Source: Octopus bimaculoides (lineage: Eukaryota). Taken from it: a stretch of DNA of 34,174 nt. This document shows, in pieces, positions 4,527-33,843 of this stretch. The notes beneath the pieces are model-generated. The model was not told where the DNA came from. It saw only the letters and a program-made list of their open reading frames with translations, and did no database searches. The DNA is taken from contig NC_068986.1 in the NCBI RefSeq assembly GCF_001194135.2, forward strand, positions 27,954,690 through 27,988,863, read 5' to 3'. Position 1 is the first letter of the stretch; every line of letters begins with the position of its first letter. Made by a program: the position numbers and the translations under genes.

Positions 4527-4562
<36 letters not shown>

Positions 4563-4774
4563 NNNNNNNNNNNNNNNNNNNNNNNNNNNNNNNNNNNNNN
4601 NNNNNNNNNNNNNNNNNNNNNNNNNNNNNNNNNNNNNNNNNNNNNNNNNNNNNNNNNNNNNNNNNNNNNNNNNNNNNNNNNNNNNNNNNNNNNNNNNNNN
4701 NNNNNNNNNNNNNNNNNNNNNNNNNNNNNNNNNNNNNNNNNNNNNNNNNNNNNNNNNNNNNNNNNNNNNNNNNN

Positions 4775-4810
<36 letters not shown>

Positions 4811-9054: not shown

Positions 9055-9103
<49 letters not shown>

Positions 9104-9119
9104 AGGTCCTAGCTTTAAG

Positions 9120-9290: not shown

Positions 9291-10039
9291 CAAGGAAATA
9301 TATCCTGTCTATAACGTGATACACCGGACGGGGAAAGAGCTAAACGGTGGCGGGGTGAGTGTATGACAAGCAAAGAAAAACACTGCACGTATCTGTCTAA
9401 CCACCATCAACATTAGTTAAGCTTTCGACACTCCAATTTCCGTTATCTACTCATAGACGAAGTTTTCAGCACCTTTAGAAACAAAATAATTAGTCGGCCT
9501 CCATTAATCAATCAGCCGCAACAACAGTGGAATACCTATCTGTTGCTTTACCTATCTGTTGCTTTCCATGGACGACTTCATTTCGTCCAGCTTTAAAATA
9601 TATTGTAGTTTTTTTGTTTTAATACAATGCGTCTATAAAGGGAATTTGTTTTCCCCATGGCGGAAAACTGTAGCTTCTGGCTTTTCAACTACAAATATGC
9701 ATTAAACATGTGCTTTTTTTCTTTTCTTTTACTTGTTTCAGGCATTTGACTGTTGCCATGCTGGAGCAGTTCTATAGATAAAAAATTTACTCTGAGGTAA
9801 GAAGTTTGCTTCCCAACCACATGGTCCTAAGTTCAGTCCCATTGCGTGGCACCTTGGGAGAGAGAGAAAGAGAGAGTACAATATGTCCAAACTGCAATAC
9901 TACACCTGAAACTATTGAAAATCAGAGTGTACAGTGGAGTACTCAGCCAGAGTAGTAGCTTGGTCGTTTGTATCATGTCCTCATTAAATGTTTTTGGTGT
10001 TTTAGGTGGCTATGTAGTCAAGTGCAGAGTGAAACACCC

Positions 10040-12509: not shown

Positions 12510-13897
12510 GAATGCTGCGACCTCTTTCTACTGCAAAAACTTGTGCTCCTCTTCCAATTCTATCGTAATAACTGAGTAAACCCAATATTATGAAAAATTA
12601 CCAGCATTCTTCCCTGTTCAAAAAGGATGACTACACAACACGTTCAGTCAGGCTCACTTGCTGTATCACTAAATAGATGGAGATCGATGTCAGAGAGATA
12701 CTCTGGAACTTCTGGAACTCTCATAACCTTTTTAATTCATCCTTTGCAATTTGGATTTAGCCCCAATTCCAAGTTACAACAGTCAATCCATCGAATTTCT
12801 TGAAGATACCACTTAAATCACAGATGGCGGTTCATGAATGAATATGTCTTCTACAAATTAAGCAGATGGCAACTTGAAAGAAGTTATTGAGTTAAAACAA
12901 GCAGACGACATTAAGCTGTGCCGTGAAATAAATAGAGCCGCTCTTATACTCTGTAGATTTTTCCTGTAATCTGACCTGGACAAAATGCAACATCAGATTA
13001 TCGACAGACAACTCAAGCTGACTGTAGACAAGTGCAGCGCCATGCATTTTGGGAGAGGGAACTCGGAATTTACATAATTCTTTGGTGACCATAAACGAGG
13101 CATTATTGTCAGCTACGATTTGTAGTGGATGAATCATTTCTAAACTCGTTAAAAAGGGCGAAGATATCTTTATTCAATAAGACCTTCGTCGGCCGCTCAC
13201 TGACTATTTAAAGTTATAAATGGCTATGGTACGTTTAGACTTGCAGTTTGCTTTTCCTGTCTTAAACACTCTTCTTGTCCAGCACGTCGATCTACTAGAA
13301 GCTGTTCAGAGATTTGCAGCCAGAGTCGTCAGTCGCTTACCATACCCCTTGCTACTCTAACAGCATCGAAACACACTAACGCTTCGACGTCTAACAGCTG
13401 CCTTCATAGAAGCCCACAAGATTCATCCACCATTTTCCAGCGACTACTTTGACCGCCTTCTTTGAATTCAGTATCTCTACGTCATTGCAGACATACTTAT
13501 GAAATGAAAAACAAAACAAACGGCAAAAAAACAAAACAAAACAAAACAAACAAAACGGTATAGCATACGTGATTTTCGTAAGCATTTTTCTTACACACAG
13601 AATGGCAGAAAATTGGAATAAGCTACCTGCATCGGTTGTCAGTTGTCAGAAATTCTGTATCCTTAAAAAATTCTCTGATTCTCTAAATATTCAGACACTA
13701 CTCCCGGTGTGTTCTATGCATCCTTTCCTCTTTACAGCTCTTTTTCCGTTCACTTTTCTATCTTTTTGGGTTCTTAATTCTGTGGCATCTACTTTTGGGC
13801 CACCACTGCCGAGATTCTGTGATTTATTCTTGCTTTCGTCTCTCCTTTTACACTTTCCCGACGAGTTGTAGTTCACCTGAGCATTGTATACAATAAA
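12510..13897 (+). pseudogene. Degenerate CR1-clade LINE: RT domain, C-terminus and 3' UTR
   Basis: Manual translation across frameshifts and stops: LFKKDD..VRLTCCITK*MEIDVREILWNF, QFGFSPNS, QADDIKL, SDLDKMQ..QLKLTVDKCSAMHFGRGN, DLLEAVQRFAAR, MAENWNKLPASVVS; all typical of CR1 ORF2. Confidence 0.85.
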
Positions 13898-14259: not shown

Positions 14260-14320
14260 CATATGTATGCATGTATGTATGTGCACATATATATGCATAT
14301 ATATGCACATACATATATAT

Positions 14321-14439
<119 letters not shown>

Positions 14440-16799: not shown

Positions 16800-17350
16800 A
16801 ATATATATATAATATATATAAAATATATATATATGAAATAAAAGAAGCGAAACGCACACTGTTTGCATAGTTTTAGTATATTTTTAATATATTTCATAAG
16901 TGAAAGAGTATTATGTTTGTCGACCGGTTTCGCTTTCGCTAATCATGACATTGAAATTATTGTAATTTCGTATTTTCTTGAGAAGTTCTTAGTCCATGTT
17001 GTGTACGGGAGTTTGTGAATGAAATGAATCAACAGGTAGAAAAAAACTTAACTACAGGTAAATGCTCATTCTTGGGGACGGTGTAAATAAATATACAAAA
17101 AACTTATAAGCTAAGGTGATGAGATGAAATATTTGCAGTGATGTGTATGTGAACATGAATTAGAATATTTACTGAGAACAAAGTTGGTTATGCGTTCTTA
17201 TTTAGGCGAGTTCTGTATTTTTCAATAAATGAATTTTCTTTATTTAAACGTTCTTGTACAGAAATTGTTTCTTTGCACTGTGAGGTTTGGTTGGGTATTA
17301 CCTGTGCATCTCTCTATGTGTTCACTCAAAGGAATCTGTCTGTACTGTAG
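16800..17350 (-). mobile_element. Penelope-like element 3' remnant (GIY-YIG endonuclease C-terminus + 3' UTR/pLTR)
   Basis: Minus strand 17347-17188 gives QYRQIPLSEHIERCTGNTQPNL / (frameshift) QCKETISVQERLNKENSFIEKYRTRLNKNA*, resembling the PLE endonuclease end (SEH..C, R..KE..FI.K....LN); a hammerhead motif lies 240 bp downstream. Left boundary is set by the gap. Confidence 0.65.
16918..16950 (-). ncRNA. Minimal type I hammerhead-ribozyme-like motif, A3-U8 core variant
   Basis: Minus strand: TGTC ATGATTA GC-GAAA-GC GAAA CCGG TC GACA = stem I TGTC/GACA, core A3U4G5A6U7U8A9, 2-bp stem II with GAAA loop, GAAA, palindromic stem III ACCGGT, GUC triplet. Confidence 0.65.
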
Positions 17351-17394
17351 TAAACAGATTCCGTTCATCTGTCCGTTTGTTTGTCTACCTGTCT

Positions 17395-17442
17395 ATCCAT
17401 CAATCAATCAATCAGTCAATCAATCAATCAATCAATCAATCA

Positions 17443-17494
<52 letters not shown>

Positions 17495-17516
17495 GTCTGT
17501 CTGTCTGTCTGTCCGT

Positions 17517-17560
<44 letters not shown>

Positions 17561-17640
17561 TTATCTTCCTACCTACCTGCCTACCCGTCCCTTCTGTCTG
17601 TCTGTCTGTCCGTTCCATCCATCTGTCCGTTTGTCTATCT
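17395..17640. repeat. Compound (TCAA)n(TCTA)n(TCTG)n(TC)n array
   Basis: Successive tetra- and dinucleotide runs. Confidence 0.9.
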
Positions 17641-17644
17641 ATCT

Positions 17645-17895
17645 GTCTTCTCCTTCCACTGTCCCGAGGAGGGTCGGTGGGGTAGAATCCTCAGACACCT
17701 TCTTCATAGGGTCCTATCAAAAGGAGCCACCGTTACACTTTCTGGTTGATTTCCGAAGCATGACCAACCGAAACTATGGATATTATCCAAACACCTCCTT
17801 CTTGGTCTACTCCTACGCTTCCTATCATTTGTCACGGCTGGAAGAGAATCTCAGGCAGAAGGAATCAGTTCGAAGAATGAGAAGGTATATGGATA
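17645..17895 (-). pseudogene. RTE-like LINE ORF C-terminal remnant
   Basis: Minus strand across frameshifts: ILRTDS / LPEILFQ / VTNDRKRRSRPRRRCLDNI...DRTL*RRCL, matching the RTE C-terminal pattern GKRRRGRPRRRWLDNI...DR..WR; runs into a GATA/GACA-type repeat tail. Confidence 0.6.
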
Positions 17896-18536
17896 GAACG
17901 AAAATGAAACTAAATAAAATTCAAGCAAGAAACGTAGTAACCATTGTTTTATGATTGGTCAACCTGATGAATACGTTTTGTTACGTGAAAACGTCGATAA
18001 AATAGTCACGGGTGATATTTACATAAAAAAGTGCCAATAACAACGAATGATTAATTAGTCAGGATATACGACATATTAAAAATGAATTATTGTTTTATAC
18101 AGTTCAAAGTCATGTTCAATTTTTATTTGTTTAAATCAATATCTGACAGAAAGAAAAAAAATTCTGTCAAGTTTATAACGATAAAGCAACAAAACAAAAA
18201 CAGATAAAAAGCAAAAATAAACGAGATATCTCTCACACATACATATGGAGACGTACACACATGTTTGCTGAGAAATGTCTCTTCACTGCTTTTTTACATA
18301 CGGGTATATAGATCCTGTTGTCTATAGATAGATACTGACTGGCATTATATATATATTTATATAATAAAGTAGGCGCTATATCACTTGAAAATCATTTCAT
18401 AAGTGAAATTAATCCCCACCCCACACAAAGATATATATATGTATGTGTGTGAATGTATGTATGATTTATCATGCATGTATTTGTCTATAAGTGTGTGTGT
18501 GTGTATATATATATATGTATGGATATCTGCATGTGT

Positions 18537-18596
<60 letters not shown>

Positions 18597-18995
18597 GTAG
18601 ATATACCAAATAAATTACATAAACATAAATTTATATATATATGTATATATATGTGTGTGTGTGTGTATGTATATGCGTATATATCAATTATTATACATAT
18701 ATATATAATTACATCTATATAGTATGTATATATGCATAATTATACCTATACAATAAGTATATATATATATATATATATATACGCGCATACGCACATATAT
18801 GTATGTATACTTGTATGTATATATATGTGTGTATATATACATACACACACACACGCATATATATATATACATACATGCATGCATATACATATATATGTAT
18901 CTTGTGTACGTTTGTATGTATCTATGTATATATGCACGCGCGCGCACACACACACCTACACACATATGTGATTGTATGTACGTATNNNNNNNNNN

Positions 18996-19032
<37 letters not shown>

Positions 19033-19324
19033 ATGTGTCCTTTTTTTTTATGTGATTTCGCTACATTAAAATATCTTCAATGGAAATTTGACAACTCTGT
19101 TGCATTATTACCCACCACTGGTTTCACAACAACGTCTTTTCATGTTTAGAGAACTTCGGTGTGGCAACCAAAATATTCGTCTGTTATTACAGCCACAGTC
19201 GGAATCATGATATGGCAAGTTGCGTCGGTAATAAATACTGTTTGCCTTTACGTTTTTGACATCTAACCACCAAAGATGTCAAGCTGGATAGAAAAATATC
19301 GCTGGAGAGTTCAATTCTTGGAGG

Positions 19325-19430
19325 ATGAGGTGCAGAGATAGGTGGGTGAAGAGTGTGAGGAAGAGAGAGGGAGAAAGAGAGAGAGAGAGGGGGAGAGAAA
19401 GAGTCAGAGAGAGTGTGTCAAAGAGAGAGT

Positions 19431-19484
<54 letters not shown>

Positions 19485-19580
19485 NNNNNNNNNNNNNNNN
19501 NNNNNNNNGGAGAGAGAGAGAGAGAGAGGAGAGGGACAGGTAGGGAGACACACAGAGAGTGAGACACTGTGAGAGAGTGA

Positions 19581-19619
<39 letters not shown>

Positions 19620-19778
19620 GTTGAGATACTGAGAGAGAGAGCGGTTGAGATACTGAGAGAGAGAGAGAGGAAGGGAGAGAGTGAGAGAGAGAGTGAAAGT
19701 TAGGGAGAGGGAAAGTCAGAGAGAGAGACAGAAAGACCGAGATAAGAGAGTGACAAAGTTATCGGAAGAGATAAGTGG

Positions 19779-19812
<34 letters not shown>
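19325..19812. repeat. (GA)n-rich purine tract containing a ~24-bp tandem duplication (gagagagagcggttgagatact)
   Basis: Seen directly. Confidence 0.9.
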
Positions 19813-20557
19813 NNNNNNNNNNNNNNNNNNNNNNNNNNNNNNNNNNNNNNNNNNNNNNNNNNNNNNNNNNNNNNNNNNNNNNNNNNNNNNNNNNNNNNNN
19901 NNNNNNNNNNNNNNNNNNNNNNNNNNNNNNNNNNNNNNNNNNNNNNNNNNNNNNNNNNNNNNNNNNNNNNNNNNNNNNNNNNNNNNNNNNNNNNNNNNNN
20001 NNNNNNNNNNNNNNNNNNNNNNNNNNNNNNNNNNNNNNNNNNNNNNNNNNNNNNNNNNNNNNNNNNNNNNNNNNNNNNNNNNNNNNNNNNNNNNNNNNNN
20101 NNNNNNNNNNNNNNNNNNNNNNNNNNNNNNNNNNNNNNNNNNNNNNNNNNNNNNNNNNNNNNNNNNNNNNNNNNNNNNNNNNNNNNNNNNNNNNNNNNNN
20201 NNNNNNNNNNNNNNNNNNNNNNNNNNNNNNNNNNNNNNNNNNNNNNNNNNNNNNNNNNNNNNNNNNNNNNNNNNNNNNNNNNNNNNNNNNNNNNNNNNNN
20301 NNNNNNNNNNNNNNNNNNNNNNNNNNNNNNNNNNNNNNNNNNNNNNNNNNNNNNNNNNNNNNNNNNNNNNNNNNNNNNNNNNNNNNNNNNNNNNNNNNNN
20401 NNNNNNNNNNNNNNNNNNNNNNNNNNNNNNNNNNNNNNNNNNNNNNNNNNNNNNNNNNNNNNNNNNNNNNNNNNNNNNNNNNNNNNNNNNNNNNNNNNNN
20501 NNNNNNNNNNNNNNNNNNNNNNNNNNNNNNNNNNNNNNNNNNNNNNNNNNNNNNNNN

Positions 20558-20718
20558 ACATCGACCCCAGTGCGTAACTGGTACTTAATTTATCGGCCCC
20601 CGAAAGGATGAAAGGCAAAGTCGACCTCGGCGGAATTTGAACTCAGGACGTAACGGCCGGACGAAATACCGCGAAGCATTTCGCTCCCAGCGTGCTAACG
20701 TTTCTGCCAGCTCGCCGC

Positions 20719-20719
<1 letters not shown>
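20558..20719 (-). mobile_element. Core-family SINE next to a (CTA)n run (20719-20781)
   Basis: Minus strand begins aggcggcgagctggcagaaacgttagcacg; same core as 24136-24348. Confidence 0.85.
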
Positions 20720-20782
<63 letters not shown>

Positions 20783-21194
20783 CGTAGAAAACCTCTGCAT
20801 TACAACTCGGTGTATATCTTGGTATACATTACGTCCAAGTCTAGCATGGAATGTACTTTACCTTTCTCCTTTCCAAATGGAGCAAGCACTCCTACAAGGC
20901 TTCCAGTTTAAAGAGAACTTCATCAATTGTGCTTTCATCCCGCTACATCTTCAGAAAGCCTTTAAGAAAGGAAACAGTATTTCTCATAAAGGGGGCGAGA
21001 TTGAAAAGGTGAGAAGACGAATGCCACGTTCAAATAGAAATTAACACGGTTTTAAACTTTTATACCTGTCCAAAAAAACGTAGTTAATTTAAAGAAGCAT
21101 TATATGGGTGTAAGCTCTGCTGTGTCAAATCTTTAATAAAGAAAGCAAAAAAAAAAAAGAAAAGGAAGAAAGAAATCCCTCCCTTTAGGGGTAG

Positions 21195-21320
21195 AGCAAT
21201 AGCTTCATTCTTTCGGGGTCGATTAAATAAGTACCAGTTACGCACTGGGGTCGATGTAATCGATTTAATCCTTTCCCCCAAATTTCAGGCCTTGTGCCTA
21301 CAGTAGAAAGGATTATTATA
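21195..21320 (+). mobile_element. 5'-truncated core-family SINE with ATT tail
   Basis: ctttcggggtcgattaaataagtaccagttacgcactggggtcgatgtaatcg...ccttgtgcctacagtagaaaggattatt. Confidence 0.8.
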
Positions 21321-21329
21321 ATAATTATT

Positions 21330-21539
21330 TACATTATTTACATTTGACGGATATTTGTCCCCATCTTGTTTGTTGTTAACACAACGTTTCGGCTGATATA
21401 CCCTCCAGCCTTCATCAGGCGATGAAGGCTGGAGGATATATCAACCGAAACGTTGTATTAACAACAAACAAGATGAGGACAAATATCCGTCAAATGTAAA
21501 TAATGTACATAATTCCTCATCTCTTAAATACAGAACTGT
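21330..21539. mobile_element. Fold-back insertion 1 (87-bp arms, 4-nt loop), probably PLE-derived
   Basis: Arms 21330-21416 and 21421-21507 with 4 mismatches; 32-bp one-sided extension; sits inside the (ATT)n tail of the preceding SINE. Confidence 0.75.
21380..21421 (-). ncRNA. Minimal type I hammerhead-like motif, canonical C3-G8 core, short stem I
   Basis: Minus strand: CGC CTGATGA A GGCTG-gagggtatat-CAGCC GAAA CG TT GTG; 5-bp stem II, palindromic stem III, GUU triplet, stem I only 3 bp including one G-U. Confidence 0.55.
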
Positions 21540-21555
21540 ATTATTGTTGTTGTTG

Positions 21556-21606
<51 letters not shown>

Positions 21607-21919
21607 GTATTGTCCAATCGAGATCGATAAAATTGAGCCCTGGGATTGGTATAATCGATCAGCCTCCTTTCCCCAAGATTTCAGGCATTGTGTCNNNNNN
21701 NNNNNNNTTTCAGAATGCATCGGAGAGCGACAGCCTAGAGAGGGCACTTACTCTTGGCGTTTAGAGTGATCCTGGGTCTGTAGGTGGGGGTGGGGGTGGG
21801 TCCTTGAATGGTCCCAGTACGAGGCCATCCCGTATCAATCAGAAGGATCATATCATCATCGTGTTCATCACATAATTGAAATACTTTTTATCTCATTTGA
21901 TTTTTGTGTAAATTCCACC

Positions 21920-22024
21920 CCCACAATCATCATCGTCGTCATGGACGTCGTCATCACCATCATCATCATCATCATCATCATCATCATTATCATCATCATC
22001 ATCATCCTCACCATCACCATCACC

Positions 22025-22056
<32 letters not shown>

Positions 22057-22085
22057 CATTATTATTATTATTACCATCATCAATA
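21920..22085. repeat. Compound (CAT)/(CAC)/(TAT) repeat
   Basis: Seen directly. Confidence 0.9.
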
Positions 22086-22484
22086 GAAAAAAAATCGAAC
22101 TAAGTATATTGAAGCAAAGTGATCGTTTTTAGATTAAAATATCATAAAGCTCTTCTGTTGAATAATATATAAGCCGGTGTCTGGACAGGCAGGGATTATT
22201 AAAGTTTGGAATTAAAGAGATTATGACGTCAACTGTGACAAAGAAAGGCCAAAATGTAAAATAGAAAAAAATATTATTAGTAACCCCTACCCCCTACCCA
22301 CACGAGTACATGAACATCCACACATACAGACATGTTACTACACATATATATTGAAAGACACATGCGCACAGTTATATACACACATACACACACACACATA
22401 CGCCTAGTTGACTTTGTAGTATTAGTTTGAATGAACAAGTTGTGAACGTACATGAAATGATGTTACAAAATCAACAATGCGCAT

Positions 22485-22645
22485 GCATGGCTGTGTCGTA
22501 AGAAGCTTGCTTCCCAACCAAATGGTTCCGGGTTCAGTCCCACCGTGTGACACCTTGAGCAAGCGTCTTCTATTATAGACACGCGCTGACCAAAATCCTT
22601 GTGAGTGGATTTGGCAGACGGAAACTGAAAGACGCCCGTCGTAAA
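22485..22645 (+). mobile_element. Family B SINE head
   Basis: ggctgtgtcgtaagaagcttgcttcccaaccaaatggttccgggttcagtccc...gacgcccgtcgta; aligns with 6718-6875. Confidence 0.7.
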
Positions 22646-22667
22646 TATATATATATATACATATACA

Positions 22668-23182
22668 CAGGGTGCGTAAGGTATTCAAGGGCATACCTTT
22701 CTTGGGTCATTGCTGCTTTTTTGCTAACTGTATAATCTTTGTTTCAGAAAATAATAACGGCAGACCCTCAGCTTACTCAAGAAAGGAAGAGGTAATGCTC
22801 ATGCTATTATTGTGGTTATAAAGGCTGAGCATAGCGAGTTAGAAATATTTCGATTATTAAAAGTTGCCAGATCTTTCGTCTACAAAGTTTGTAAGGAACT
22901 AGAGACTGAAGATGGAAACATATCACCAGTTTCAAAGCATAAAACAGCATTCTAAACGCTTTGAAATTATCAGAACACCTGAATTTATCCAACAAGTTCA
23001 ACAGGCCATTGATTACAATCTCAGAAAGACTATCACGTCAATTGCAAGAGATTTGCATGTGTCAGAAATGTTGTCCACGAAGACATCAGATATAAATCAT
23101 ATATGAGGAGGAAAGGTCAATTTGTCAGAAAAAGCAAAATAAATTCACTATATCAGGCCTAAAAAGTTCTTAAACAAACTGA
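22668..23182 (+). pseudogene. maT/DD37D-type Tc1-mariner element, left end and degenerate N-terminal DNA-binding region, ending in a gap
   Basis: Starts CAGGGTG in a TA-rich run (typical ITm terminus); translation IIVVIKAEHSELEIFRLLKVARSFVYKVCKELE / IIRTPEFIQQVQQAIDYNLRKTITSIARDLHVSE / VVHEDIRYKSY. Confidence 0.7.
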
Positions 23183-23803
23183 NNNNNNNNNNNNNNNNNN
23201 NNNNNNNNNNNNNNNNNNNNNNNNNNNNNNNNNNNNNNNNNNNNNNNNNNNNNNNNNNNNNNNNNNNNNNNNNNNNNNNNNNNNNNNNNNNNNNNNNNNN
23301 NNNNNNNNNNNNNNNNNNNNNNNNNNNNNNNNNNNNNNNNNNNNNNNNNNNNNNNNNNNNNNNNNNNNNNNNNNNNNNNNNNNNNNNNNNNNNNNNNNNN
23401 NNNNNNNNNNNNNNNNNNNNNNNNNNNNNNNNNNNNNNNNNNNNNNNNNNNNNNNNNNNNNNNNNNNNNNNNNNNNNNNNNNNNNNNNNNNNNNNNNNNN
23501 NNNNNNNNNNNNNNNNNNNNNNNNNNNNNNNNNNNNNNNNNNNNNNNNNNNNNNNNNNNNNNNNNNNNNNNNNNNNNNNNNNNNATATATATATATACAC
23601 ACACACATATATGTATGTATAAAGCCAACCTACTGTGTTATCGGGCTAAATAGATTTCAGCAGAAGTTATTTTCGCAACTTTCGCAACTTTCGCATCAAA
23701 ATTCTTGAATAGATTATATATTTTCTGACTTTCCATTGAATTCTGTAAAAATCCTTTAGACATGACGATTTCATCATCATCTTAATCCTCATCGTGACTA
23801 TCG

Positions 23804-23841
<38 letters not shown>

Positions 23842-24135
23842 GTTGTTGTTGTTGGTGTTGCTATTATTAAGTTGTATATTACGTAAGTGACTCAAGTGCC
23901 GACAGCACTTATCAGACCGTTTGATGAAAATTTGATAAGTTCCATGCTCGAAGCTATCAGGCATTGAATCACTTATGTAATTTACAGCCGAATACAAAAC
24001 AGATACGCTGCTAAGTTTTGAGTACGATTTCTCCTATTTGTTCCGCTGAACTCATACGTGTGTATACGTGCGTGCGCGTGTACATGAACGTATATTTATT
24101 TTACATATATTATTAAAATTATCATGTTTATTAGT

Positions 24136-24560
24136 AAGGCGGCGAGTAGGCAGAATGCTTTGCGGTATTTCGCCCATCGTTATGTTCTGAGTTCAAATTC
24201 CGCCGAGGTCGACTTTGCCTTTCACCATTTCGGGGTCGATAAATTAAGTACCAGTTACGCACTGGGGTCGATGTAATCGACTTAATCCCTTTGTCTGTCT
24301 TTGTTTGCCCCCTCTATGTTTAGCTCCTTGTGGGCAATAAAGAAATAAGAAACGTTAGCACGCCGGTCGAAATGCTTAGCGGTGTTTCGTCTGCCGCTAC
24401 GTTCTGAGTTTAAATTCCGCCGAGGTCGACTTTGCCTTTCATCCTTTCAGGGTCGATAAATTAAGTACCAGTTGTGTATTGGGCTCGATCTAATCGACTG
24501 GTCCTGTCACCCAAAATTTCAGGCCTTGTGCTTGTAGCAGAAAGGATTATTATTATTATT
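24136..24560 (+). mobile_element. Tandem SINE dimer with two different 3' tails
   Basis: Unit 1 (24136-24348) ends ttaatccctttgtctgt...gcaataaagaaataa; unit 2 (24349-24560) ends aaatttcaggccttgtgc...gaaaggattatt. Confidence 0.85.
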
Positions 24561-24606
24561 TTTGATTTCACTCATGTTTGGTCTTATTCCTAGCAGAATT
24601 TATGTG

Positions 24607-24840
24607 GGTAGCGAGCTGGTAGAAACATTAATGTGACGTGCGAAATACTTAGCGGTATTTCGTTTGCCGCTACGTTCTGAGTTCGAATTCCGCCGAGGTC
24701 GACTTTGCCTTTCATCCTTTCGGGGTCGATTAAATAAGTACCGGTTACGCACTGGTGCCGATATAATCGACTTAATCCGTTTGTCTGTCCTTGTTTGTCC
24801 CCACTGTGTGTAGCTCCTTGTGAGCAGTAAAGAAATAAGA
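24607..24840 (+). mobile_element. Core-family SINE
   Basis: Same core and tail type as 24136-24348. Confidence 0.85.
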
Positions 24841-25124
24841 ATTTATGTGGGTAGCGGTTTACGTACCTGTAACCTTAGGTATCCACTATCTTTCAACAGT
24901 GTTTCAAGTGCTTAAAATCCTCCTGATAATCCCTCCTGTCTCTAAGAAGCAAACTTTCCGTAGAAGTTCTCACTGCATTTTATTGCAATCTCCTTCAATT
25001 ATTTGCCTATATGTTTGCTTACAGTTCCCAATGCACCACTTATTATAGGCACAACCTTTACACTTATCATATTTCAAATTCTTGCAATTTCAAATTTTAA
25101 GAAATTGTATCAGAGATGCACATA

Positions 25125-25318
25125 TCTGCAGCCACTAAGGGACATGCTCAACTGGTTAAGGTCAAGCAACTGACAAGCAAATATGTGGTATTGAGCAGAA
25201 TATTTGCTGTAACCCATCTTTTATACCAAGACAAAACAAGCATGTATATTATAACTCTTCCAACCAGTTACGATCAGAAGCCATGAGAGCCACTGCCTGG
25301 TATTGCATCAGGGCATTT

Positions 25319-25353
<35 letters not shown>

Positions 25354-25384
25354 TATTATTATTATTATTATTATTATCATCGTT
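25125..25384 (+). repeat. Probable interspersed-repeat 3' end with (ATC)n(ATT)n tail, unclassified
   Basis: Non-simple sequence ending abruptly in a trinucleotide tail; no second copy in the window, so weakly supported. Confidence 0.35.
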
Positions 25385-25786
25385 NNNNNNNNNNNNNNNN
25401 NNNNNNNNNNNNNNNNNNNNNNNNNNNNNNNNNNNNNNNNNNNNNNNNNNNNNNNNNNNNNNNNNNNNNNNNNNNNNNNNNNNNNNNNNNNNNNNNNNNN
25501 NNNNNNNNNNNNNNNNNNNNNNNNNNNNNNNNNNNNNNNNNNNNNNNNNNNNNNNNNNNNNNNNNNNNNNNNNNNNNNNNNNNNNNNNNNNNNNNNNNNN
25601 NNNNNNNNNNNNNNNNNNNNNNNNNNNNNNNNNNNNNNNNNNNNNNNNNNNNNNNNNNNNNNNNNNNNNNNNNNNNNNNNNNNNNNNNNNNNNNNNNNNN
25701 NNNNNNNNNNNNNNNNNNNNNNNNNNNNNCTTTGTATTTTGAAAGTTTCTCCATTTCTTTTAGGGAAACGTTATCATCTGCTGGTA

Positions 25787-25849
<63 letters not shown>

Positions 25850-26279
25850 CATCATCGTCGTCGTCGTCGTCGTCATCATCATCAAACATTGTACAGATGT
25901 TAATTAGAATGCTATATTCACCTACAGTAGTCTCTAATGAAATATCAACGTGGCAATAAATCTCACTCGGTAGATTCCTCTTCTTACAACCACAATGATG
26001 CTGTCTATAAAGACGAAGTATTTACAATGCTTACAACGGCAAACGTTGGAAAGTTATTCACTAGTTCATGAAATCTATAAATATACACAAAAATTAATTA
26101 CTAGTACTTATATTAGAATTGATAATTAGTTCCAAAAGGGTAAACATCAATTGAATGGATGTGAAACGGTTGTACACTTGAACATGTATAGGCATGTATG
26201 AACGCCTGGAAGTATATATTTATGTTTATGCGTGTATACGTGTTCGTGTATGTTTATGCTTGTATATGCGTTCATGAGT

Positions 26280-26535
26280 GGAGGCACGTGGCTTAGTGGT
26301 TAGGATGTCAGCATCATGATCGTAAGATAGTGGTTTCGATCCTGGATTGGGCGACGCGTTGTGTTCTTGAGCAAAACACCTCATTTCACGTTGCTCCAGT
26401 CCACTCAGCTGGCAAAAATGAGTAACGCTGCGATGGACTGGCGTTCCGTCCAGCTGGGGAACACATACGCCATTGAAACCGGGAAACCGGACCCATGAGC
26501 CTGGCTAGGCTTTAAAAGGATGCATTTATTATTTT
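26280..26535 (+). mobile_element. tRNA-derived SINE
   Basis: A box TGGCTTAGTGG, B box GGTTTCGATCC, then gtgttcttgagcaaaacacctcatttcacgttgctccagtccactcagc; A/T-rich tail. Confidence 0.8.
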
Positions 26536-26662
26536 TTTTTATATGCGTTCATAAATGTTGTGAATGTTGCTGTGTACATTGATAAAATTAATAATGACTG
26601 ATGGTCTAGTTCAATTCAATACAAGTTGATAAATGCATGTGCATGAATGTGAGATTTGTATC

Positions 26663-26842
26663 TATGGTATTTACTTGTATATAAGCGGCACTAATTTACA
26701 CTTAATTTTAGTAGAAAAAAAAAATAGAGTGTGACATACTCGGGACAAAGCTGTTATCAATTTCGAATCTGATGGGAAAACATTTTGTACCACGATTTAA
26801 CACGAAATTAGGAGCGCGACTTATACACGAGTAAACACGGTA
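26663..26842. mobile_element. Old TA-flanked MITE (Tc1/pogo-like termini), 180 bp
   Basis: Left tatggtatttacttgtatataagcggcac versus reverse complement of the right end taccgtgtttactcgtgtataagtcgcgc: 21/29 identical. Confidence 0.5.
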
Positions 26843-28349
26843 TATCCTCTCTCAATATATCTTCTTCAAATTAAGTAAACTGTTGGGAGAAAATATGTTT
26901 CCTTCTAGACTCTTTCAACACAGCCATGTGGAATACAAAAACCAATCTGTTAAACGTATTTCTAGGATATACAAGTGTGTGTGTAAGGAAGATATGATGT
27001 TCCCTGGCAGGAGAATTGACTGGGATCTCATAAAATGTTTTTGTGTATTAATGACTAACATTCATAGTCTGTGAAGGCGATCGAAAGATACTTCCGTGCT
27101 TCCTGATAAAATTACTCTCAGATACCGTGTGAGTTATTTCATATCTCTTCTTGCACAGCCAAAGTTTATAATCCTAAAATGCCCACCACTGCTGGACTGT
27201 AGCAGTAGGTGCCTACAACATCTGATGGACATCATCGAACTTCACTAAGTGAAAAGCGTTAACTTACCACTACAATGCTAGTAAACTATCTTCAGATAAA
27301 CACACAGTATGCTAACAGTTCTCTATAAGATAATCTGAAAGCCCCACTGCCTCGCATATTGCAGCAGAGCCTTGTGGCCCCCTGCTTCTTATTCACTTAG
27401 TGGAATTCTGTTACATACGACTCCTTAACAGAAATAGTTGCCACTGAAAAGGTTTCTCCCCCTTCAGTTCCAGCTTCCCAGTATGCGCATCAGCAAAACT
27501 CCTAAAGTCTTCTTTTCCGCACCATCAATCTATTTTATAATGATTGAAGAAGTGCGGGACTGTGTCCAGTTTATTTTTTTTCTCACATTATAANNNNNNN
27601 NNNNNNNNNNNNNNNNNNNNNNNNNNNNNNNNNNNNNNNNNNNNNNNNNNNNNNNNNNNNNNNNNNNNNNNNNNNNNNNNNNNNNNNNNNNNNNNNNNNN
27701 NNNNNNNNNNNNNNNNNNNNNNNNNNNNNNNNNNNNNNNNNNNNNNNNNNNNNNNNNNNNNNNNNNNNNNNNNNNNNNNNNNNNNNNNNNNNNNNNNNNN
27801 NNNNNNNNNNNNNNNNNNNNNNNNNNNNNNNNNNNNNNNNNNNNNNNNNNNNNNNNNNNNNNNNNNNNNNNNNNNNNNNNNNNNNNNNNNNNNNNNNNNN
27901 NNNNNNNNNNNNNNNNNNNNNNNNNNNNNNNNNNNNNNNNNNNNNNNNNNNNNNNNNNNNNNNNNNNNNNNNNNNNNNNNNNNNNNNNNNNNNNNNNNNN
28001 NNNNNNNNNNNNNNNNNNNNNNNNNNNNNNNNNNNNTTGTCTGCCAAAAAATTCTGCAGTGATGTGAGACATTCATTACTCTCTTTTAATTGAAATGTAT
28101 TTAAGTTTGTCTTTAATTGCTGGAAAAGGGACACTAGAAACACCTAAGACGTCTATAAGTGAATATAATGAAACAACAGTATGGCAAAACTCAGCTCTTC
28201 ATATTGGTAAATGTAATTCATTAATTCCCACCAGAGCGTCTATTTTCAAATTCACTCAAGTGAAGATTCATGAACATCTTCCCTTGACAGTCTCATCTCT
28301 TTTTCCAATTTTTATTATCGCTTTAAAAAAAAAAAAGGTATCATGGATT

Positions 28350-28657
28350 TACGGAGATGTACTTGCATAGCAAGTGACCTGATCTGAGATCGTGTACTGG
28401 AACGAAAACAATTTCAACGTGGAAGGTGCTTATAAGCCATTTAAAATAACACACAAAAACCGTTAGATTCACTTCAACATTTAAATTTAATTTGCCGAAA
28501 TATTTTCGTCGCTTTGAGACAGAATTTTGTCAGTGAACAGGTCGCGGTCTCAAAGAGACGAAAATATTTTGACAAATTAAATTTAAATGTTGAAGTGAAT
28601 CTAACGGTTTTTGTGTGTTATTTTAAATGGCTTATAAACACCTTCCACGCTGCAATT
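28350..28657. mobile_element. Fold-back insertion 2 (103-bp arms, 26-nt spacer) with 13-bp target-site duplication
   Basis: Arms 28418-28520 and 28547-28649 with 4 mismatches; GGTATCATGGATT at 28337-28349 and 28658-28670. Confidence 0.85.
28526..28576 (+). ncRNA. Minimal type I hammerhead-like motif, G3-C8 core variant
   Basis: TTTGTCA GTGAACA G GTCGC-ggtctcaaa-GAGAC GAAA ATAT TT TGACAAA: 7-bp stem I, core G3U4G5A6A7C8A9, stem II 4/5 bp, palindromic stem III AATATT, UUU triplet. Confidence 0.6.
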
Positions 28658-29140
28658 GGTATCATGGATTATTTTACTGATTATAGAATAAACATTAACA
28701 GAGTCTTTGTTCAATTCATGAGCATATTATCAATTTACTCTTTAATTTATGTATCATATTTATATGTGTATATAATATCAATATACGCAACACATATGCC
28801 ACATATACTAGTCCCACTAATGCGTGTACAGAGCCATTAAGTACGAACAAACATACCTCTGATCTTTCAGACACCAACAAGGTAAATGATGCTAAAGGCA
28901 TCTTATCAATTTCGAACATTGCATTCAAAAGTTAGCGTCTATCTTCGCCAAGTTTCACAATCGCCATCTATAAGATTTCATCCCCTGTCATATTATTAAA
29001 ACTTTTATTGCATGCAACATGTAAATGTTATAATGGGATTAATTTGAAAACAAGTTTAAGAATGGCAACAGACAATATGCAGACAGGTTAAAGTGGAAAC
29101 TGAATGAAGATTCAAAATTATTATAAAATTGGTTTTCAGT

Positions 29141-32157: not shown

Positions 32158-33040
32158 NNNNNNNNNNNNNNNNNNNNNNNNNNNNNNNNNNNNNNNNNNN
32201 NNNNNNNNNNNNNNNNNNNNNNNNNNNNNNNNNNNNNNNNNNNNNNNNNNNNNNNNNNNNNNNNNNNNNNNNNNNNNNNNNNNNNNNNNNNNNNNNNNNN
32301 NNNNNNNNNNNNNNNNNNNNNNNNNNNNNNNNNNNNNNNNNNNNNNNNNNNNNNNNNNNNNNNNNNNNNNNNNNNNNNNNNNNNNNNNNNNNNNNNNNNN
32401 NNNNNNNNNNNNNNNNNNNNNNNNNNNNNNNNNNNNNNNNNNNNNNNNNNNNNNNNNNNNNNNNNNNNNTATATATATATATATGGGAGAATTTACGAAA
32501 AAAACAACAACAGACGAGGATAGGTGGTGTAAACAACAAAAGGATGTATTAGCTTAACGCTCGGGAATAGAGAAAATTTTTAATACACATATATGCCAAT
32601 GAAAAGAAGAAGACAAAGAAAATTCTTTAACGCATCTTTAATTATAAATCACATATGTTTCCATACATTCTCCATTTCCAACGCCAGTTTACGCGAAAAT
32701 TCTAAAAGAAAAATTACGTAATATTTGCGGTTTTAGGCATTGGAGAGGCATTTCCTCAAACTTGCAACAAAGTCATGCTATTTCATTGAGCGTCTATCAG
32801 ACCTTTTTGTTAGAAAAGAACCGAGAAGAAATGAAAAGGAGAAAGTTAAAAGTGTGTATGCGGGGATGGGTGTGTGGAGAAGATATTATGTGGGGGGTGG
32901 GAGGAATCAAGAGGGTGGATATATATAATGATAGGAGGGAGAAAGGGAAGGAAGGGGAGGAAAACGAATAGAAAGCGAAAGAGGGGAATCGGAAGGAGAA
33001 GGAGGGGGAAAAGTGGAAGAAGAAGAAGAAGAAGAAGAAG

Positions 33041-33843
33041 CGTCTCCAAAATGGACCAAACAGAAAAATCCAACGGGTTGAGATCGGGGCTTCTCGAGGG
33101 CCATACATCCTTGCCTATGAATGATGGAATGTTTTTCTGAATCCAGTGTTGTGTCTGTTTGGAGCTGTGAGATGGTGCCGAGTCCTGTTGGAGGCTCGAA
33201 GGTACACTTTGCAAGCGATCATTCACTGATGTATTGCTGAGTGTTAATTTTAACACCCGAGGGCACAAAAACGAGGGGCTGTCACAGCCGCCCAAACCAT
33301 AACTGACAGTGGATTTTGACGTCAATTTACGAATCTACCCTCGATGAAGCCTGATACACTCCAAAGTCGGTCGTTCTGGTGGTTTACTGTTTGTTCGATG
33401 TCAAGTTTCCTTTCATTTGTGAACACCAGGTTGGGCAGCGTGCCTTCAGAAATCTGACGCAGGATAAAACGACTTCTCTCCAGTTTCATGGCCTTATAAA
33501 CTTGCGTGAGCTCATGACGGCAGATTATCTTGTAAGGGTGGGTCCTGAGGTCCTCCTTCAGCACTCGATACATCGATGTTCGCCTTATTTTTGCTGTGGC
33601 AGCCAGCCTTCTGACGGAATGACGAGTATTTCGCCACATCTTTTCTCTGGTATTTTTGATAAACTGAGGAGTCCGCTCACTTCTTTTTCGGCTACGTCCA
33701 GGTCGTTCAGTGGTGGAACCAGTCTCTTGAAATTTTTTGTCAATTTTCCAGACTGTTTGATTAATTTTAAGCTTCTTTGCTATAGCTGTTTTACTTTCGC
33801 CTCCTTTGTGTGGAGTTATGATTGTATTTCGGTTCATAGCCAT
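33041..33843 (-). pseudogene. DD37D (maT) transposase pseudogene
   Basis: HTH N-terminus, VFTNERKL (first catalytic D lost), NHQNDRLW, SVMVWAAVT, PLVFVPSGVKINTQQY, QQDSAPSH...WPSRSPDLNPLDFSVWSILE with 37 residues between the second and third D; one TGA and frameshifts; cut off by (CTT)n. Confidence 0.9.

What the first reader, a model, noticed from the sequence alone, without database searches (positions are those of the whole stretch)
16918..28576. Three unrelated hammerhead-like motifs cover three Watson-Crick versions of the core 3:8 pair (C-G, G-C, A-U)
Seen: three motifs with different stem sequences share the order stem I - NUGANNA - stem II - GAAA - palindromic stem III - UH - stem I. 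The cores are CUGAUGA (21412-21418, minus), GUGAACA (28533-28539, plus) and AUGAUUA (16940-16946, minus). U4, G5, A6, A9 and GAAA are invariant, while positions 3 and 8 change together and stay complementary. Established: the hammerhead core has a C3-G8 tertiary Watson-Crick pair that tolerates compensatory swaps, and Penelope-like elements carry minimal type I hammerheads whose palindromic stem III works through dimerisation. Inference: this genome holds several PLE-related lineages with non-canonical cores that a CUGANGA-only search would miss. I cannot tell from the sequence whether these variants have been catalogued.
Basis: partly seen in the sequence, partly recalled or inferred. Interest (0 to 1): 0.88.

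Follow-up and report, generated by a model that had tools for sequence, protein, structure and literature searches.

The report
Octopus Penelope-type hammerhead ribozyme relics
The three motifs are real leftovers of the small self-cutting "hammerhead" RNAs carried by Penelope-like jumping genes in the octopus genome; two of them have an unusual but still complementary pair in the catalytic core, which is of moderate interest and rests on one copy each.

Summary
The window is Octopus bimaculoides chromosome DNA (GCA_001194135.2). They are not chance. One descriptor finds exactly these three; shuffles give 0.09 per window and scrambled-core controls almost nothing. All three also have the G10.1-C11.1 pair, which the descriptor did not ask for.

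- **Control loci:** the same descriptor, and a covariance model built only from outside loci, pick up genuine hammerheads beside Penelope-like (PLE) reverse-transcriptase genes. That model ranks motif 1 top in the window (E 5e-4).
- **Motifs 1 and 2:** each sits next to the axis of a 190-310 bp near-perfect palindrome. This matches PLE "mini-units" found elsewhere, which are twin inverted, 5'-truncated copies with a 13-bp target duplication and microsatellite targets.
- **Motif 2 helix II:** the mirror arm restores a 5-bp helix II.
- **Motif 3:** it resembles a hammerhead-like stretch downstream of an octopus PLE gene remnant.

The PLE-hammerhead reading is therefore supported. These copies have no gene, and the two in palindromes are probably inert. 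The G3-C8 and A3-U8 cores each rest on one copy, with no family or cleavage evidence. 3:8 covariation (U3-A8) in PLE hammerheads was published in 2014.

The parts
21380..21421 (-). Motif 1: canonical PLE-type minimal hammerhead. Stem I 5' CGC 21421-21419; core CUGAUGA 21418-21412; unpaired A 21411; helix II GGCUGG 21410-21405 / UCAGCC 21396-21391 (loop 21404-21397); GAAA 21390-21387; CG 21386-21385; U16.1 21384; U17 21383; stem I 3' GUG 21382-21380.
   Evidence: Sequence. Descriptor hit. Top hit in the window of covariance model R1, which was built only from hammerheads in PLE loci outside the window: 21.6 bits, E 5.4e-4.
21323..21539 (-). Palindromic mini-unit that carries motif 1. Sense arm 21323-21416, 4-nt centre 21417-21420, mirror (inverted) arm 21421-21514, 25-nt extension on the mirror copy 21515-21539. 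It sits in an (ATT/GTT)n microsatellite tail of a SINE-like repeat.
   Evidence: Inverted repeat of 94 nt, 95% complementary. Five arm mismatches listed. The whole unit folds at -154.6 kcal/mol, z -26. Flanks read. No unambiguous target duplication (microsatellite; possibly ATTATT).
28526..28576 (+). Motif 2: hammerhead with a G3-C8 core. Stem I 5' UUUGUCA 28526-28532; core GUGAACA 28533-28539; unpaired G 28540; helix II GUCGC 28541-28545 / GAGAC 28555-28559 (28556 A mismatched now; the mirror arm has C); GAAA 28560-28563; AUAU 28564-28567; U16.1 28568; U17 28569; stem I 3' UGACAAA 28570-28576.
   Evidence: Sequence. Descriptor hit, score 14. The mirror-arm base at 28511 restores the 10.4-11.4 pair. 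With that base the isolated 57-nt RNA folds as stem I plus a 5-bp helix II as its minimum-energy structure, -14.5 kcal/mol.
28337..28670 (+). Palindromic mini-unit that carries motif 2. 13-bp target-site duplication GGTATCATGGATT at 28337-28349 and 28658-28670; 59-nt extension of the inverted copy 28350-28408; mirror arm 28409-28520; 26-nt extra 5' part of the longer sense copy 28521-28546; sense arm 28547-28657.
   Evidence: Inverted repeat of 117 nt, 93%. blastn self-hits give the arms and the 13-nt direct repeat. Sequence. Folds at -159.3 kcal/mol. Same layout and the same 13-bp duplication as the proven insertion L004 9388-9620.
16918..16950 (-). Motif 3: hammerhead-like motif with an A3-U8 core. 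Stem I 5' UGUC 16950-16947; core AUGAUUA 16946-16940; helix II GC-GAAA-GC 16939-16932; GAAA 16931-16928; CCGG 16927-16924; U16.1 16923; C17 16922; stem I 3' GACA 16921-16918.
   Evidence: Sequence. The only palindromic-helix-III hit even under the strictest geometry. The predicted homodimer forms a 6-bp ACCGGU/ACCGGU helix III, -16.5 against -8.4 kcal/mol for two monomers. It shares GAAACCGGU with a canonical-core hammerhead in O. sinensis (L002) and with a stretch downstream of an O. bimaculoides PLE gene remnant (L003).
16837..16917 (-). Roughly 85 nt between the predicted cleavage site of motif 3 and a (TA)n microsatellite. This is the presumed 3' terminal segment of the truncated insertion; its 5' boundary is not defined.
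   Evidence: Sequence. The distance is comparable with the ~90 nt from the hammerhead cut site to the reverse-transcription start in the anole PLE (PMC11167929). Inference.
13375..13413 (-). Possible decayed PLE hammerhead: GCU|UCUAUGA|A|GGC..GUC|GAAG|CG|U|U|AGU.
   Evidence: R1 hit, 13.5 bits, E 0.15. Sequence. Not significant on its own.
17961..17998 (+). Possible decayed PLE hammerhead: AAC|CUGAUGA|..|GAAAA|CG|U|C|GAU, with an extra A in the GAAA box.
   Evidence: R1 hit, 10.5 bits, E 1.1. Sequence. Not significant on its own.

Best explanation
The three motifs are relics of the minimal type I hammerhead ribozymes carried near the 3' ends (pseudo-LTRs) of Penelope-like retroelements (PLEs), or of gene-less derivatives that PLEs mobilise, in Octopus bimaculoides.

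**How the elements arose (inferred).** Each motif sits in a short, gene-less, heavily 5'-truncated insertion in or beside a microsatellite. Motifs 1 and 2 lie in 'mini-units': two inverted copies of the last ~95-115 nt of a source RNA joined head to head, with the junction at or just upstream of the hammerhead. This is what would result if both ends of the cut target DNA primed reverse transcription, as reported in vitro for a PLE protein. It would also fit an RNA template whose 5' end, or the point where the enzyme switched template, lay just upstream of the ribozyme.

**How the ribozyme works in a source transcript (established for this family).** Helix III is only a 4-6 nt palindrome (ACGU, AAUAUU, ACCGGU). 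Two copies must therefore pair through it to form a double hammerhead, and each copy then cuts after position 17.

**The copies in this window (inferred).**
- Motif 1 has the canonical C3-G8 core.
- Motifs 2 and 3 have G3-C8 and A3-U8, which keep the tertiary 3:8 pair.
- Motifs 1 and 2 are probably inert. A transcript through the palindrome would fold into a ~100-bp hairpin, only one complete ribozyme is present, and there is no tandem partner.

**Shown:** non-random motif, PLE-type anatomy, matching architecture in genuine PLE loci. **Inferred:** how the mini-units arose, that the swapped cores were already in the source RNAs, and any activity.
For: **Organism.** The window is O. bimaculoides GCA_001194135.2, CM046606.1. 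Octopus genomes carry PLEs (PMC13282606).

**Not chance.** See the shuffle, score and scrambled-core controls.

**Family features that my descriptor did not require** (listed in PMC4209133):
- G10.1-C11.1 is present in all three.
- There is an unpaired nucleotide after A9 in m1 and m2.

**Independent loci.**
- The descriptor recovers hammerheads beside PLE reverse-transcriptase fragments in L004, L005 and L007. No other hit of the same quality appears in about 140 kb.
- Model R1, built from three of those hammerheads, scores m1 at 21.6 bits (E 5.4e-4), the best hit in the window.
- R1 also finds an O. bimaculoides hammerhead (L003 6446-6479, 30.7 bits) downstream of PLE reverse-transcriptase fragments.

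**Architecture.**
- Palindromic mini-units with the axis 5-8 nt upstream of stem I occur in genuine PLE loci. L004 9388-9620 is 233 bp, has a 13-bp duplication AACTTTTTAGTTA, and a second copy of the host sequence preserves the empty site. L005 ~1939-2148 lies inside (TA)n.
- O. sinensis L002 has 159-nt arms (99%) around a canonical-core hammerhead.
- The m2 unit has the same 13-bp duplication length. Like the L004 unit, the m1 and m2 units carry a one-sided extension on the inverted copy.

**Helix II of m2.** The mirror arm restores a 5-bp helix.

**Literature.**
- PLE insertions are highly 5'-truncated, often have an adjacent inverted truncated copy and one-sided tails, prefer microsatellites, and carry the hammerhead near the 3' end (PMC8557442).
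- A PLE protein cleaves and extends both DNA strands (PMC11167929).
Against: - There is no reverse transcriptase or GIY-YIG coding sequence anywhere in the window (tblastn). The PLE link rests on anatomy and parallels, not on adjacency.
- No second copy of any of the three elements was found in the window, in JGI metagenome contigs, among predicted proteins, or in the other octopus loci. Family membership and consensus are therefore unknown.
- Each motif has one weak helix.
- R1 does not report m2 or m3 at E <= 10. Rfam reports no hammerhead for any of the three. Rfam also essentially misses the genuine PLE hammerheads of L004 (14.5 bits against a 48.5 threshold), so that negative carries little weight.
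- The isolated m3 RNA folds no better than shuffles (z +0.5).
- My descriptor thresholds were chosen after seeing the motifs.
It was validated only by the Pfam RVT_1 hits on the proteins it led to.
Confidence: 0.8

Rival explanations
1. Solo monomers of non-LTR 'retrozymes'. These are gene-less, hammerhead-bearing repeats that normally sit in tandem arrays, are expressed as small circular RNAs, and are now argued to derive from PLE pseudo-LTRs. On this reading the elements are copies of such non-autonomous RNAs and not truncated autonomous PLEs.
For: There is no coding capacity downstream of any of the three hammerheads. Type I hammerheads with a palindromic helix III are shared by both groups (PMC7229834 abstract). 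A 2026 preprint derives animal retrozymes from PLE pseudo-LTRs and notes dispersed as well as tandem copies.
Against: The elements are not tandem, and no second copy lies nearby. Genuine PLE clusters (L004, L005) contain mini-units of the same architecture made of their own pseudo-LTR sequence. This rival largely overlaps the main explanation, because the mobilising machinery and the ribozyme type are the same.
Confidence: 0.25
2. Foldback or MITE-type DNA transposons, or hairpin-RNA genes, in which the hammerhead-like letters near the apex are incidental. This concerns motifs 1 and 2.
For: The inverted repeats are near-perfect at 94 and 117 nt, and the hairpin folds are extremely stable. Rfam gives sub-threshold plant-miRNA-like hits for the hairpins. 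A Tc1/mariner transposase remnant lies in the window.
Against: - Scrambled-core controls on the same real sequence give no hits at the palindromes.
- A 13-bp duplication and one-sided extensions do not look like Tc1/mariner MITEs, which make TA duplications.
- The same palindrome-plus-hammerhead layout is made of PLE pseudo-LTR sequence inside PLE clusters, with an empty site preserved.
- R1 hits m1 independently.
Confidence: 0.06
3. Chance matches to a permissive pattern in AT-rich, repeat-rich DNA, picked out after the fact.
For: The helices are short. The number of windows scanned is unknown. Other octopus loci (about 50 kb) gave no further hit with the first descriptor.
Against: About 0.0006 hits per window are expected at the motifs' quality, that is score >=10 together with G10.1-C11.1. 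Scrambled boxes on 162 kb of real DNA give about 0.01 per box, against 9 for the true boxes. There is an independent model hit for m1, mirror-arm restoration of m2 helix II, and the architecture parallels. Chance remains conceivable for m3 alone.
Confidence: 0.04
4. The G3-C8 and A3-U8 cores are post-insertion decay of canonical C3-G8 hammerheads and were not features of the source RNAs.
For: The copies are old enough to have diverged; the arms are 93-95% identical. Clearly mutated cores occur in other relics: A6U in L003, G5C in L005 2033, and a deletion at window 13375.
Against: Each case needs two specific transversions that happen to restore complementarity. With roughly 3-4% change per arm in the m2 unit, the chance is of the order of 1e-4 (my estimate). 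Every decayed example seen elsewhere is a single hit that breaks the core, not a compensated pair.
Confidence: 0.12

Closest known systems
Minimal type I hammerhead ribozymes of Penelope-like elements ('min-HHR'; Cervera & De la Pena 2014, PMC4209133; dimer cleavage in Lunse, Weinberg & Breaker, RNA Biol 14:1499, not readable here)
   Same: Type I order. UGA..A and GAAA boxes. Short helix I (3-7 bp). An unpaired nucleotide after A9 (m1, m2). G10.1-C11.1. A palindromic 15.2-16.2 segment in place of a real helix III. Dispersed single copies attributed to truncated PLEs. Pairs on opposite strands. A 3:8 core covariant (U3-A8) already described.
   Different: The G3-C8 (m2) and A3-U8 (m3) versions were not found in the literature I could search. 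m3 has only a 2-bp helix II and no unpaired nucleotide. None of the three lies next to a PLE gene in this window.
PLE insertion structures: pseudo-LTRs in direct or inverted orientation, an inverted 5'-truncated copy next to the unit, one-sided 30-40 bp 'tails', microsatellite targets (Craig et al. 2021, PMC8557442; anole PLE biochemistry, PMC11167929)
   Same: Inverted twin copies, extreme 5' truncation, a one-sided extension, microsatellite targets, and a hammerhead about 60-200 nt from the outer (3') end.
   Different: Here, and in L002, L004 and L005, the whole insertion is only about 190-450 bp. In all five palindromic units I saw, the junction lies from within the core (m1) to about 27 nt upstream of stem I. 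I did not find this regularity stated in the papers I read. The extensions are 25 and 59 nt, not 30-40.
Animal non-LTR retrozymes (Cervera & De la Pena 2020, PMC7229834; Li, Clavereau & Pollet 2026 preprint)
   Same: Gene-less repeats with type I hammerheads that need dimers, probably derived from PLE pseudo-LTRs.
   Different: Retrozymes are tandem arrays that give circular RNAs. These are single, palindromic or truncated insertions.
Engineered 3:8 swaps in hammerheads (Przybilski & Hammann 2007, RNA 13:1625, cited from my own knowledge; a G3-C8 variant is mentioned in PMC3884650)
   Same: Watson-Crick replacements of C3-G8 can retain activity, depending on context.
   Different: Those are laboratory mutants. 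Here the swaps occur in genomic relics whose activity is untested.

Membership tests
Hammerhead ribozyme, PLE minimal type I | Conserved core boxes C3-U4-G5-A6-N7-G8-A9, G12-A13-A14-A15.1, U16.1-H17 | tested here: inconclusive
   m1 has every box. m2 and m3 have every box except positions 3 and 8, which are G/C and A/U, so they are complementary but not canonical.
Hammerhead ribozyme, PLE minimal type I | Type I three-helix order, with helix I open and helix II a hairpin directly between A9 and G12 | tested here: met
   The descriptor with fixed geometry finds all three. Helix lengths I/II are 3/6 (m1), 7/3 plus a mismatch plus 1 (m2) and 4/2 (m3).
Hammerhead ribozyme, PLE minimal type I | G10.1-C11.1 closing pair (highly conserved, PMC4209133) | tested here: met
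   Present in 3 of 3. Only 6% of shuffle hits have it.
Hammerhead ribozyme, PLE minimal type I | Unpaired nucleotide between A9 and 10.1 | tested here: inconclusive
   Present in m1 (A 21411) and m2 (G 28540), absent in m3. It is also absent in the canonical-core O. sinensis example in L002.
Hammerhead ribozyme, PLE minimal type I | Palindromic 15.2-16.2 / loop 3, allowing a dimeric helix III | tested here: met
   ACGU, AAUAUU and ACCGGU. The m3 homodimer is predicted to form the intermolecular helix.
Hammerhead ribozyme, PLE minimal type I | Large helix II (about 4-8 bp) | tested here: inconclusive
   m1 has 6 bp. m2 has 5 bp only after restoring the mirror-arm base. m3 has 2 bp, so the feature is not met there.
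Hammerhead ribozyme, PLE minimal type I | Consensus families with compensatory changes in the stems and at 3:8 | not testable with these tools
   No tool searches the octopus genome by DNA. No other copies were found in the window, the fetched loci, metagenome contigs or predicted proteins.
Hammerhead ribozyme, PLE minimal type I | Mg2+-dependent self-cleavage after position 17 (as dimers) | not testable with these tools
   This needs an experiment.
Hammerhead ribozyme (Rfam models RF00163, RF00008, RF02275-7) | Score at or above the family gathering threshold | tested here: not met
   No hammerhead hit even at E <= 10. As a control, the genuine PLE hammerheads of L004 reach only 14.5 bits against 48.5, so this test cannot detect the subclass.
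Penelope-like element (autonomous) | Gene encoding a PLE-type reverse transcriptase with a GIY-YIG endonuclease | tested here: not met
   tblastn with a PLE probe finds nothing in the window at E <= 10, while it finds fragments in L003, L004 and L005. The window elements are gene-less fragments.
Penelope-like element (insertion signature) | 5' truncation, an adjacent inverted truncated copy, a one-sided tail, a variable target duplication, a microsatellite target | tested here: met
   m1 and m2 units. The same signature is seen in PLE loci L004 and L005, with an empty site preserved for L004. The features themselves are from PMC8557442.
Non-LTR retrozyme | Tandem repeats of about 170-400 bp, each with a hammerhead | tested here: not met
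   No direct or tandem copies of any of the three elements.
MITE / foldback DNA transposon | Terminal inverted repeats with a fixed short duplication (TA for Tc1/mariner), in multi-copy families | tested here: inconclusive
   Long inverted repeats are present. The m2 unit has a 13-bp duplication and an asymmetric 59-nt extension. Copy number cannot be tested.

The most novel reading that the evidence does not exclude
Octopus PLE-derived elements may carry naturally maintained, dimer-active hammerheads with G3-C8 and A3-U8 cores. Together with the canonical C3-G8 and the published U3-A8, nature would then have sampled all four Watson-Crick versions of the tertiary 3:8 pair.

The palindromic mini-units may also record a short-circuit of PLE retrotransposition: reverse transcription started on both DNA ends, on an RNA whose 5' end lies just upstream of the ribozyme.
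Probability: 0.3. Interest if true: 0.6.

Novelty: new member of a known kind. Interest (0 to 1): 0.45.

Why it matters
**Annotation.** Standard tools (Rfam, CUGANGA descriptors) do not see these ribozyme relics, so PLE-derived sequence in cephalopod genomes is under-annotated. Near-perfect palindromes like these are also the kind of structure that breaks short-read assemblies.

**Ribozyme biology.** Natural G3-C8 and A3-U8 cores, if they hold up in family consensus sequences and in cleavage assays, would be a clean natural confirmation that what matters at positions 3 and 8 is the pair and not the bases. They would also widen the search patterns used to count hammerheads in animal genomes.

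**Retroelement mechanism.** Mini-units with a fixed junction just upstream of the hammerhead, a 13-bp duplication and a one-sided tail are compact natural records of how PLEs integrate. That mechanism is still poorly understood.

None of this overturns current views.

Tried and rejected
**My first reading, now withdrawn.** I first took motifs 1 and 2 for accidents at hairpin apices and thought motif 1 lacked a UH site and had a stray A. After reading the PLE min-HHR definition I saw that the 'stray' A is the family's usual unpaired nucleotide, and that ACGU+U is the minimal helix III plus cleavage site.

**Searches that found nothing or could not help**
- Rfam at gathering and at E <= 10, on the whole window and on small windows: no hammerhead. 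The L004 control later showed this test is blind to the subclass.
- Concatenated translations across the three elements, searched against 5.8 billion proteins to find other copies: no hit.
- Exact look-ups of three window ORFs: not on record.
- Metagenome scan with a motif 1 pattern: 0 matches.
- blastn of the three elements against the window and the fetched loci: no other copies.
- Whole-window direct-repeat search: only microsatellites.
- Lunse et al. (RNA Biol 14:1499): not held.

**Leads I downgraded**
- The first descriptor on about 50 kb of other octopus DNA gave no hits. This showed the octopus genome is not uniformly dense in such motifs. Later model searches did find PLE hammerheads there with single core mutations.
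- The hammerhead-like stretch at L003 2225-2256 (U3-A8, 7-bp stem I) may be a deletion derivative of an m3-like sequence between two CGAAA repeats, so I do not count it as a fourth core type.
- The strict-descriptor hits at 16978-17043 (+) and 9395-9454 (-) have no palindromic helix III and lack G10.1-C11.1. I treat them as chance.

Full report
**Where the window comes from.**
- The window has 17 N-gaps (6,025 N), is about 36% G+C and is full of microsatellites.
- Its only convincing coding remnant is a frameshifted Tc1/mariner transposase at 32846-33843 (-).
- That ORF is on record on a 117-Mb NCBI record, GCA_001194135.2 CM046606.1, which is Octopus bimaculoides. The nearest named relatives are from O. 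sinensis and O. bimaculoides.
- None of the three motifs or their surrounding elements touches a gap, so the gap warning does not affect the finding.

**Checking the observation.**
- My first pass was sceptical. Motifs 1 and 2 sit at the centre of inverted repeats of 94 nt (95%) and 117 nt (93%) that fold at -155 and -159 kcal/mol. Rfam reports no hammerhead even at E <= 10.
- Reading the definition of PLE minimal hammerheads changed the parsing. The family has a short helix I, an unpaired nucleotide after A9, a conserved G10.1-C11.1 pair and a palindromic 15.2-16.2 segment instead of a true helix III (PMC4209133).
- On that definition the three motifs parse as follows:
  - m1 = CGC|CUGAUGA|A|GGCUGG..UCAGCC|GAAA|CG|U|U|GUG
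  - m2 = UUUGUCA|GUGAACA|G|GUCGC..GAGAC|GAAA|AUAU|U|U|UGACAAA
  - m3 = UGUC|AUGAUUA|GC-GAAA-GC|GAAA|CCGG|U|C|GACA

**Is it more than chance?**
- A fixed-geometry descriptor finds exactly these three in the window with a Watson-Crick 3:8 pair, plus one weak non-paired hit.
- 1000 dinucleotide shuffles average 0.094 hits, and none reaches three. Replacing UGA or GAAA by any other word on the real sequence gives 0.05-0.13 hits per word, with the true words the sole maximum.
- Shuffle hits are mostly minimal. Only 0.0097 per window reach the motifs' summed helix score (>=10), and only 6% have G10.1-C11.1, which all three motifs have although I did not ask for it.
- On 162 kb of real DNA (window plus fetched loci), high-quality hits number 9 for the true boxes, against 3 in total for 255 scrambled GAAA boxes. 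Most of the 'decoy' trinucleotide hits (CGA, TCA, TGT) are genuine hammerheads with one core mutation.
- The thresholds were set after seeing the motifs, so these P-values are optimistic. The margin is large enough that chance is not a serious explanation for m1 and m2, and it is unlikely for m3.

**Independent controls outside the window.**
- The octopus fragment then retrieved 120 relatives, many carrying RVT_1 domains. I fetched loci around four of them.
- In those loci my descriptor picks up GCU|CUGACGA|A|GGGC-UAAC-GCUC|GAAA|CG|U|C|AGC and relatives beside the reverse-transcriptase fragments. These have the same 3-bp helix I, unpaired A and ACGU palindrome as m1.
- A covariance model built only from three of these outside sequences ranks m1 first in the window (21.6 bits, E 5.4e-4).
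- The same model finds an O. bimaculoides hammerhead with a single A6U change downstream of the L003 PLE fragments (30.7 bits).
- It finds many more in the PLE loci, including a family with C at core position 4.
- Rfam gives those genuine PLE hammerheads only 14.5 bits (threshold 48.5), so its silence on the window says little.

**What the palindromes are.**
- Genuine PLE loci contain the same structure.
  - L004 9388-9620 is a 233-bp unit of two inverted pseudo-LTR ends. Each end has a hammerhead, and the axis lies 5 nt upstream of stem I. It is flanked by a 13-bp duplication (AACTTTTTAGTTA), and a second copy of the host sequence preserves the empty site.
  - L005 ~1939-2148 is a similar unit inside a (TA)n tract, with the axis 8 nt upstream of stem I.
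  - O. sinensis L002 has 159-nt arms (99%) around a 132-nt centre that holds CUGAUGA|GGAU..AUCC|GAAA|CCGG|U|A.
- The m2 unit in the window has a 13-bp duplication (GGTATCATGGATT, 28337-28349 and 28658-28670), a 59-nt extension on the inverted copy, and a longer sense copy that starts about 5 nt upstream of stem I.
- The m1 unit lies in an (ATT/GTT)n tract, has a 25-nt extension on the inverted copy, and its axis falls inside the core, so only the minus strand keeps a full core.
- These are the published hallmarks of PLE insertions: strong 5' truncation, an adjacent inverted truncated copy, one-sided tails, microsatellite targets, and the hammerhead near the 3' end (PMC8557442).
- They also fit the in vitro finding that a PLE protein cleaves and extends both DNA strands and starts reverse transcription about 90 nt downstream of the hammerhead cut site (PMC11167929).
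- In all five palindromic units the junction lies from within the core to about 27 nt upstream of stem I. From this I infer that the copied RNA began, or the enzyme switched template, just upstream of the ribozyme. This is inference, not shown.

**The palindrome as a second witness.**
- The two arms are independent copies of one source.
- In m2 the sense arm has A at 28556 (a G.A mismatch at 10.4-11.4), while the mirror arm has C. That C gives a perfect 5-bp helix II, GUCGC/GCGAC.
- With it, the isolated RNA adopts stem I plus helix II as its minimum-energy fold.
- In m1 the sense arm keeps helix II intact where the mirror arm has a G-to-A change.

**Motif 3.**
- It is not in a palindrome.
- It ends about 85 nt upstream of a (TA)n tract.
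- It shares GAAACCGGU with the canonical-core L002 hammerhead, and a 14-nt identity plus the same box with a stretch about 400 nt downstream of an inverted PLE gene remnant in L003.
- The L003 stretch may be a deletion derivative, so I do not count its apparent U3-A8 core.
- The predicted m3 homodimer forms the ACCGGU helix III.
- Its 2-bp helix II and the lack of an unpaired nucleotide make it the weakest member.

**The 3:8 question.**
- Among high-quality hits every 3:8 pair is Watson-Crick: C-G seven times, G-C once, A-U once. The few non-paired hits are all low-quality and lack G10.1-C11.1.
- Post-insertion decay is unlikely to explain the swapped cores, because each needs two specific transversions that restore pairing. 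The decayed relics seen elsewhere have single, uncompensated hits.
- PLE hammerheads with a U3-A8 core are already in the literature (PMC4209133). I found no report of natural G3-C8 or A3-U8, but I could not read Lunse et al..

**Function of these copies.**
- In a source transcript, two copies would pair through the palindrome and each would cut after position 17. This is established for the family, with low activity in vitro (PMC4209133, PMC6765202).
- The m1 and m2 copies themselves are probably inert: they have no gene and no tandem partner, and a full transcript would be sequestered in a long hairpin. m3 also has no gene and no partner.

**Verdict.**
- The PLE-hammerhead interpretation is supported.
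- The claim of lineages with non-canonical cores is plausible but untested.
- This is a new member of a known kind, of moderate interest.

Noticed in passing
L006 11777-11810, L007 11778-11811 / 9076-9109 / 1664-1697, L008 5325-5358 / 2624-2657 (GCA_949826985.1, organism not identified): A PLE hammerhead family, UUC|CCGACGA|A|GGGC-CUUU-GCUC|GAAA|CG|U|C|GAA, has C instead of U at core position 4 in several copies. This is a family-level non-canonical core that CUGANGA searches would miss.
   Followed up: partly
L004 9388-9620; L005 ~1939-2148; L002 8183-8632; window 21323-21539 and 28350-28657: In all five palindromic PLE mini-units the inverted junction lies from within the hammerhead core to about 27 nt upstream of stem I. 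Two of them (L004 and window m2) have a 13-bp target duplication. This may mark the 5' end of the copied RNA.
   Followed up: partly
L003 6446-6479 (+), with PLE reverse-transcriptase fragments at 3978-5100 (+) and 3234-2691 (-): An O. bimaculoides PLE relic with two copies arranged head to head. It carries a hammerhead, UUU|CUGUGGA|A|GAGC-AUAG-GCUC|GAAA|CG|U|U|AAA, with an A6-to-U change (30.7 bits with model R1).
   Followed up: partly
window 13375-13413 (-) and 17961-17998 (+): Two weak model hits that look like decayed PLE hammerheads: one has lost G5 and has GAAG, the other has an extra A in the GAAA box. If real, the window holds five PLE-hammerhead relics in 28 kb, perhaps because PLEs favour microsatellite-rich DNA.
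   Followed up: partly
window 32846-33843 (-): A Tc1/mariner transposase pseudogene split by a frameshift. The best named relatives are O. sinensis LOC115214814 (71%) and O. bimaculoides LOC106876097 (62%).
   Followed up: partly
window 2819-2845 and 21290-21320: The same repeat end (TTGTGCCTACAGTAGAAAGGATTAT) followed by an (ATT)n tract appears twice, probably the 3' end of an octopus SINE. The motif 1 unit is inserted in one of these tails.
   Followed up: no
window, many places (e.g. 862-932, 14263-14327, 18808-18880): There are dozens of sub-threshold Rfam hits to mir-297, mir-466 and mir-3149. All lie on (TG)n/(TA)n microsatellites, so they are artefacts of low-complexity sequence.
   Followed up: yes
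window 21323-21514: Four of the five differences between the two arms of the motif 1 palindrome are G in the sense arm against A in the mirror arm. The cause is unknown (CpG decay, or editing of the source RNA).
   Followed up: no
L004 9450-9650: Rfam scores genuine PLE minimal hammerheads at only 14.5 bits (Hammerhead_3, threshold 48.5) and gives no Hammerhead_1 hit, so this subclass is effectively invisible to Rfam-based annotation.
   Followed up: yes
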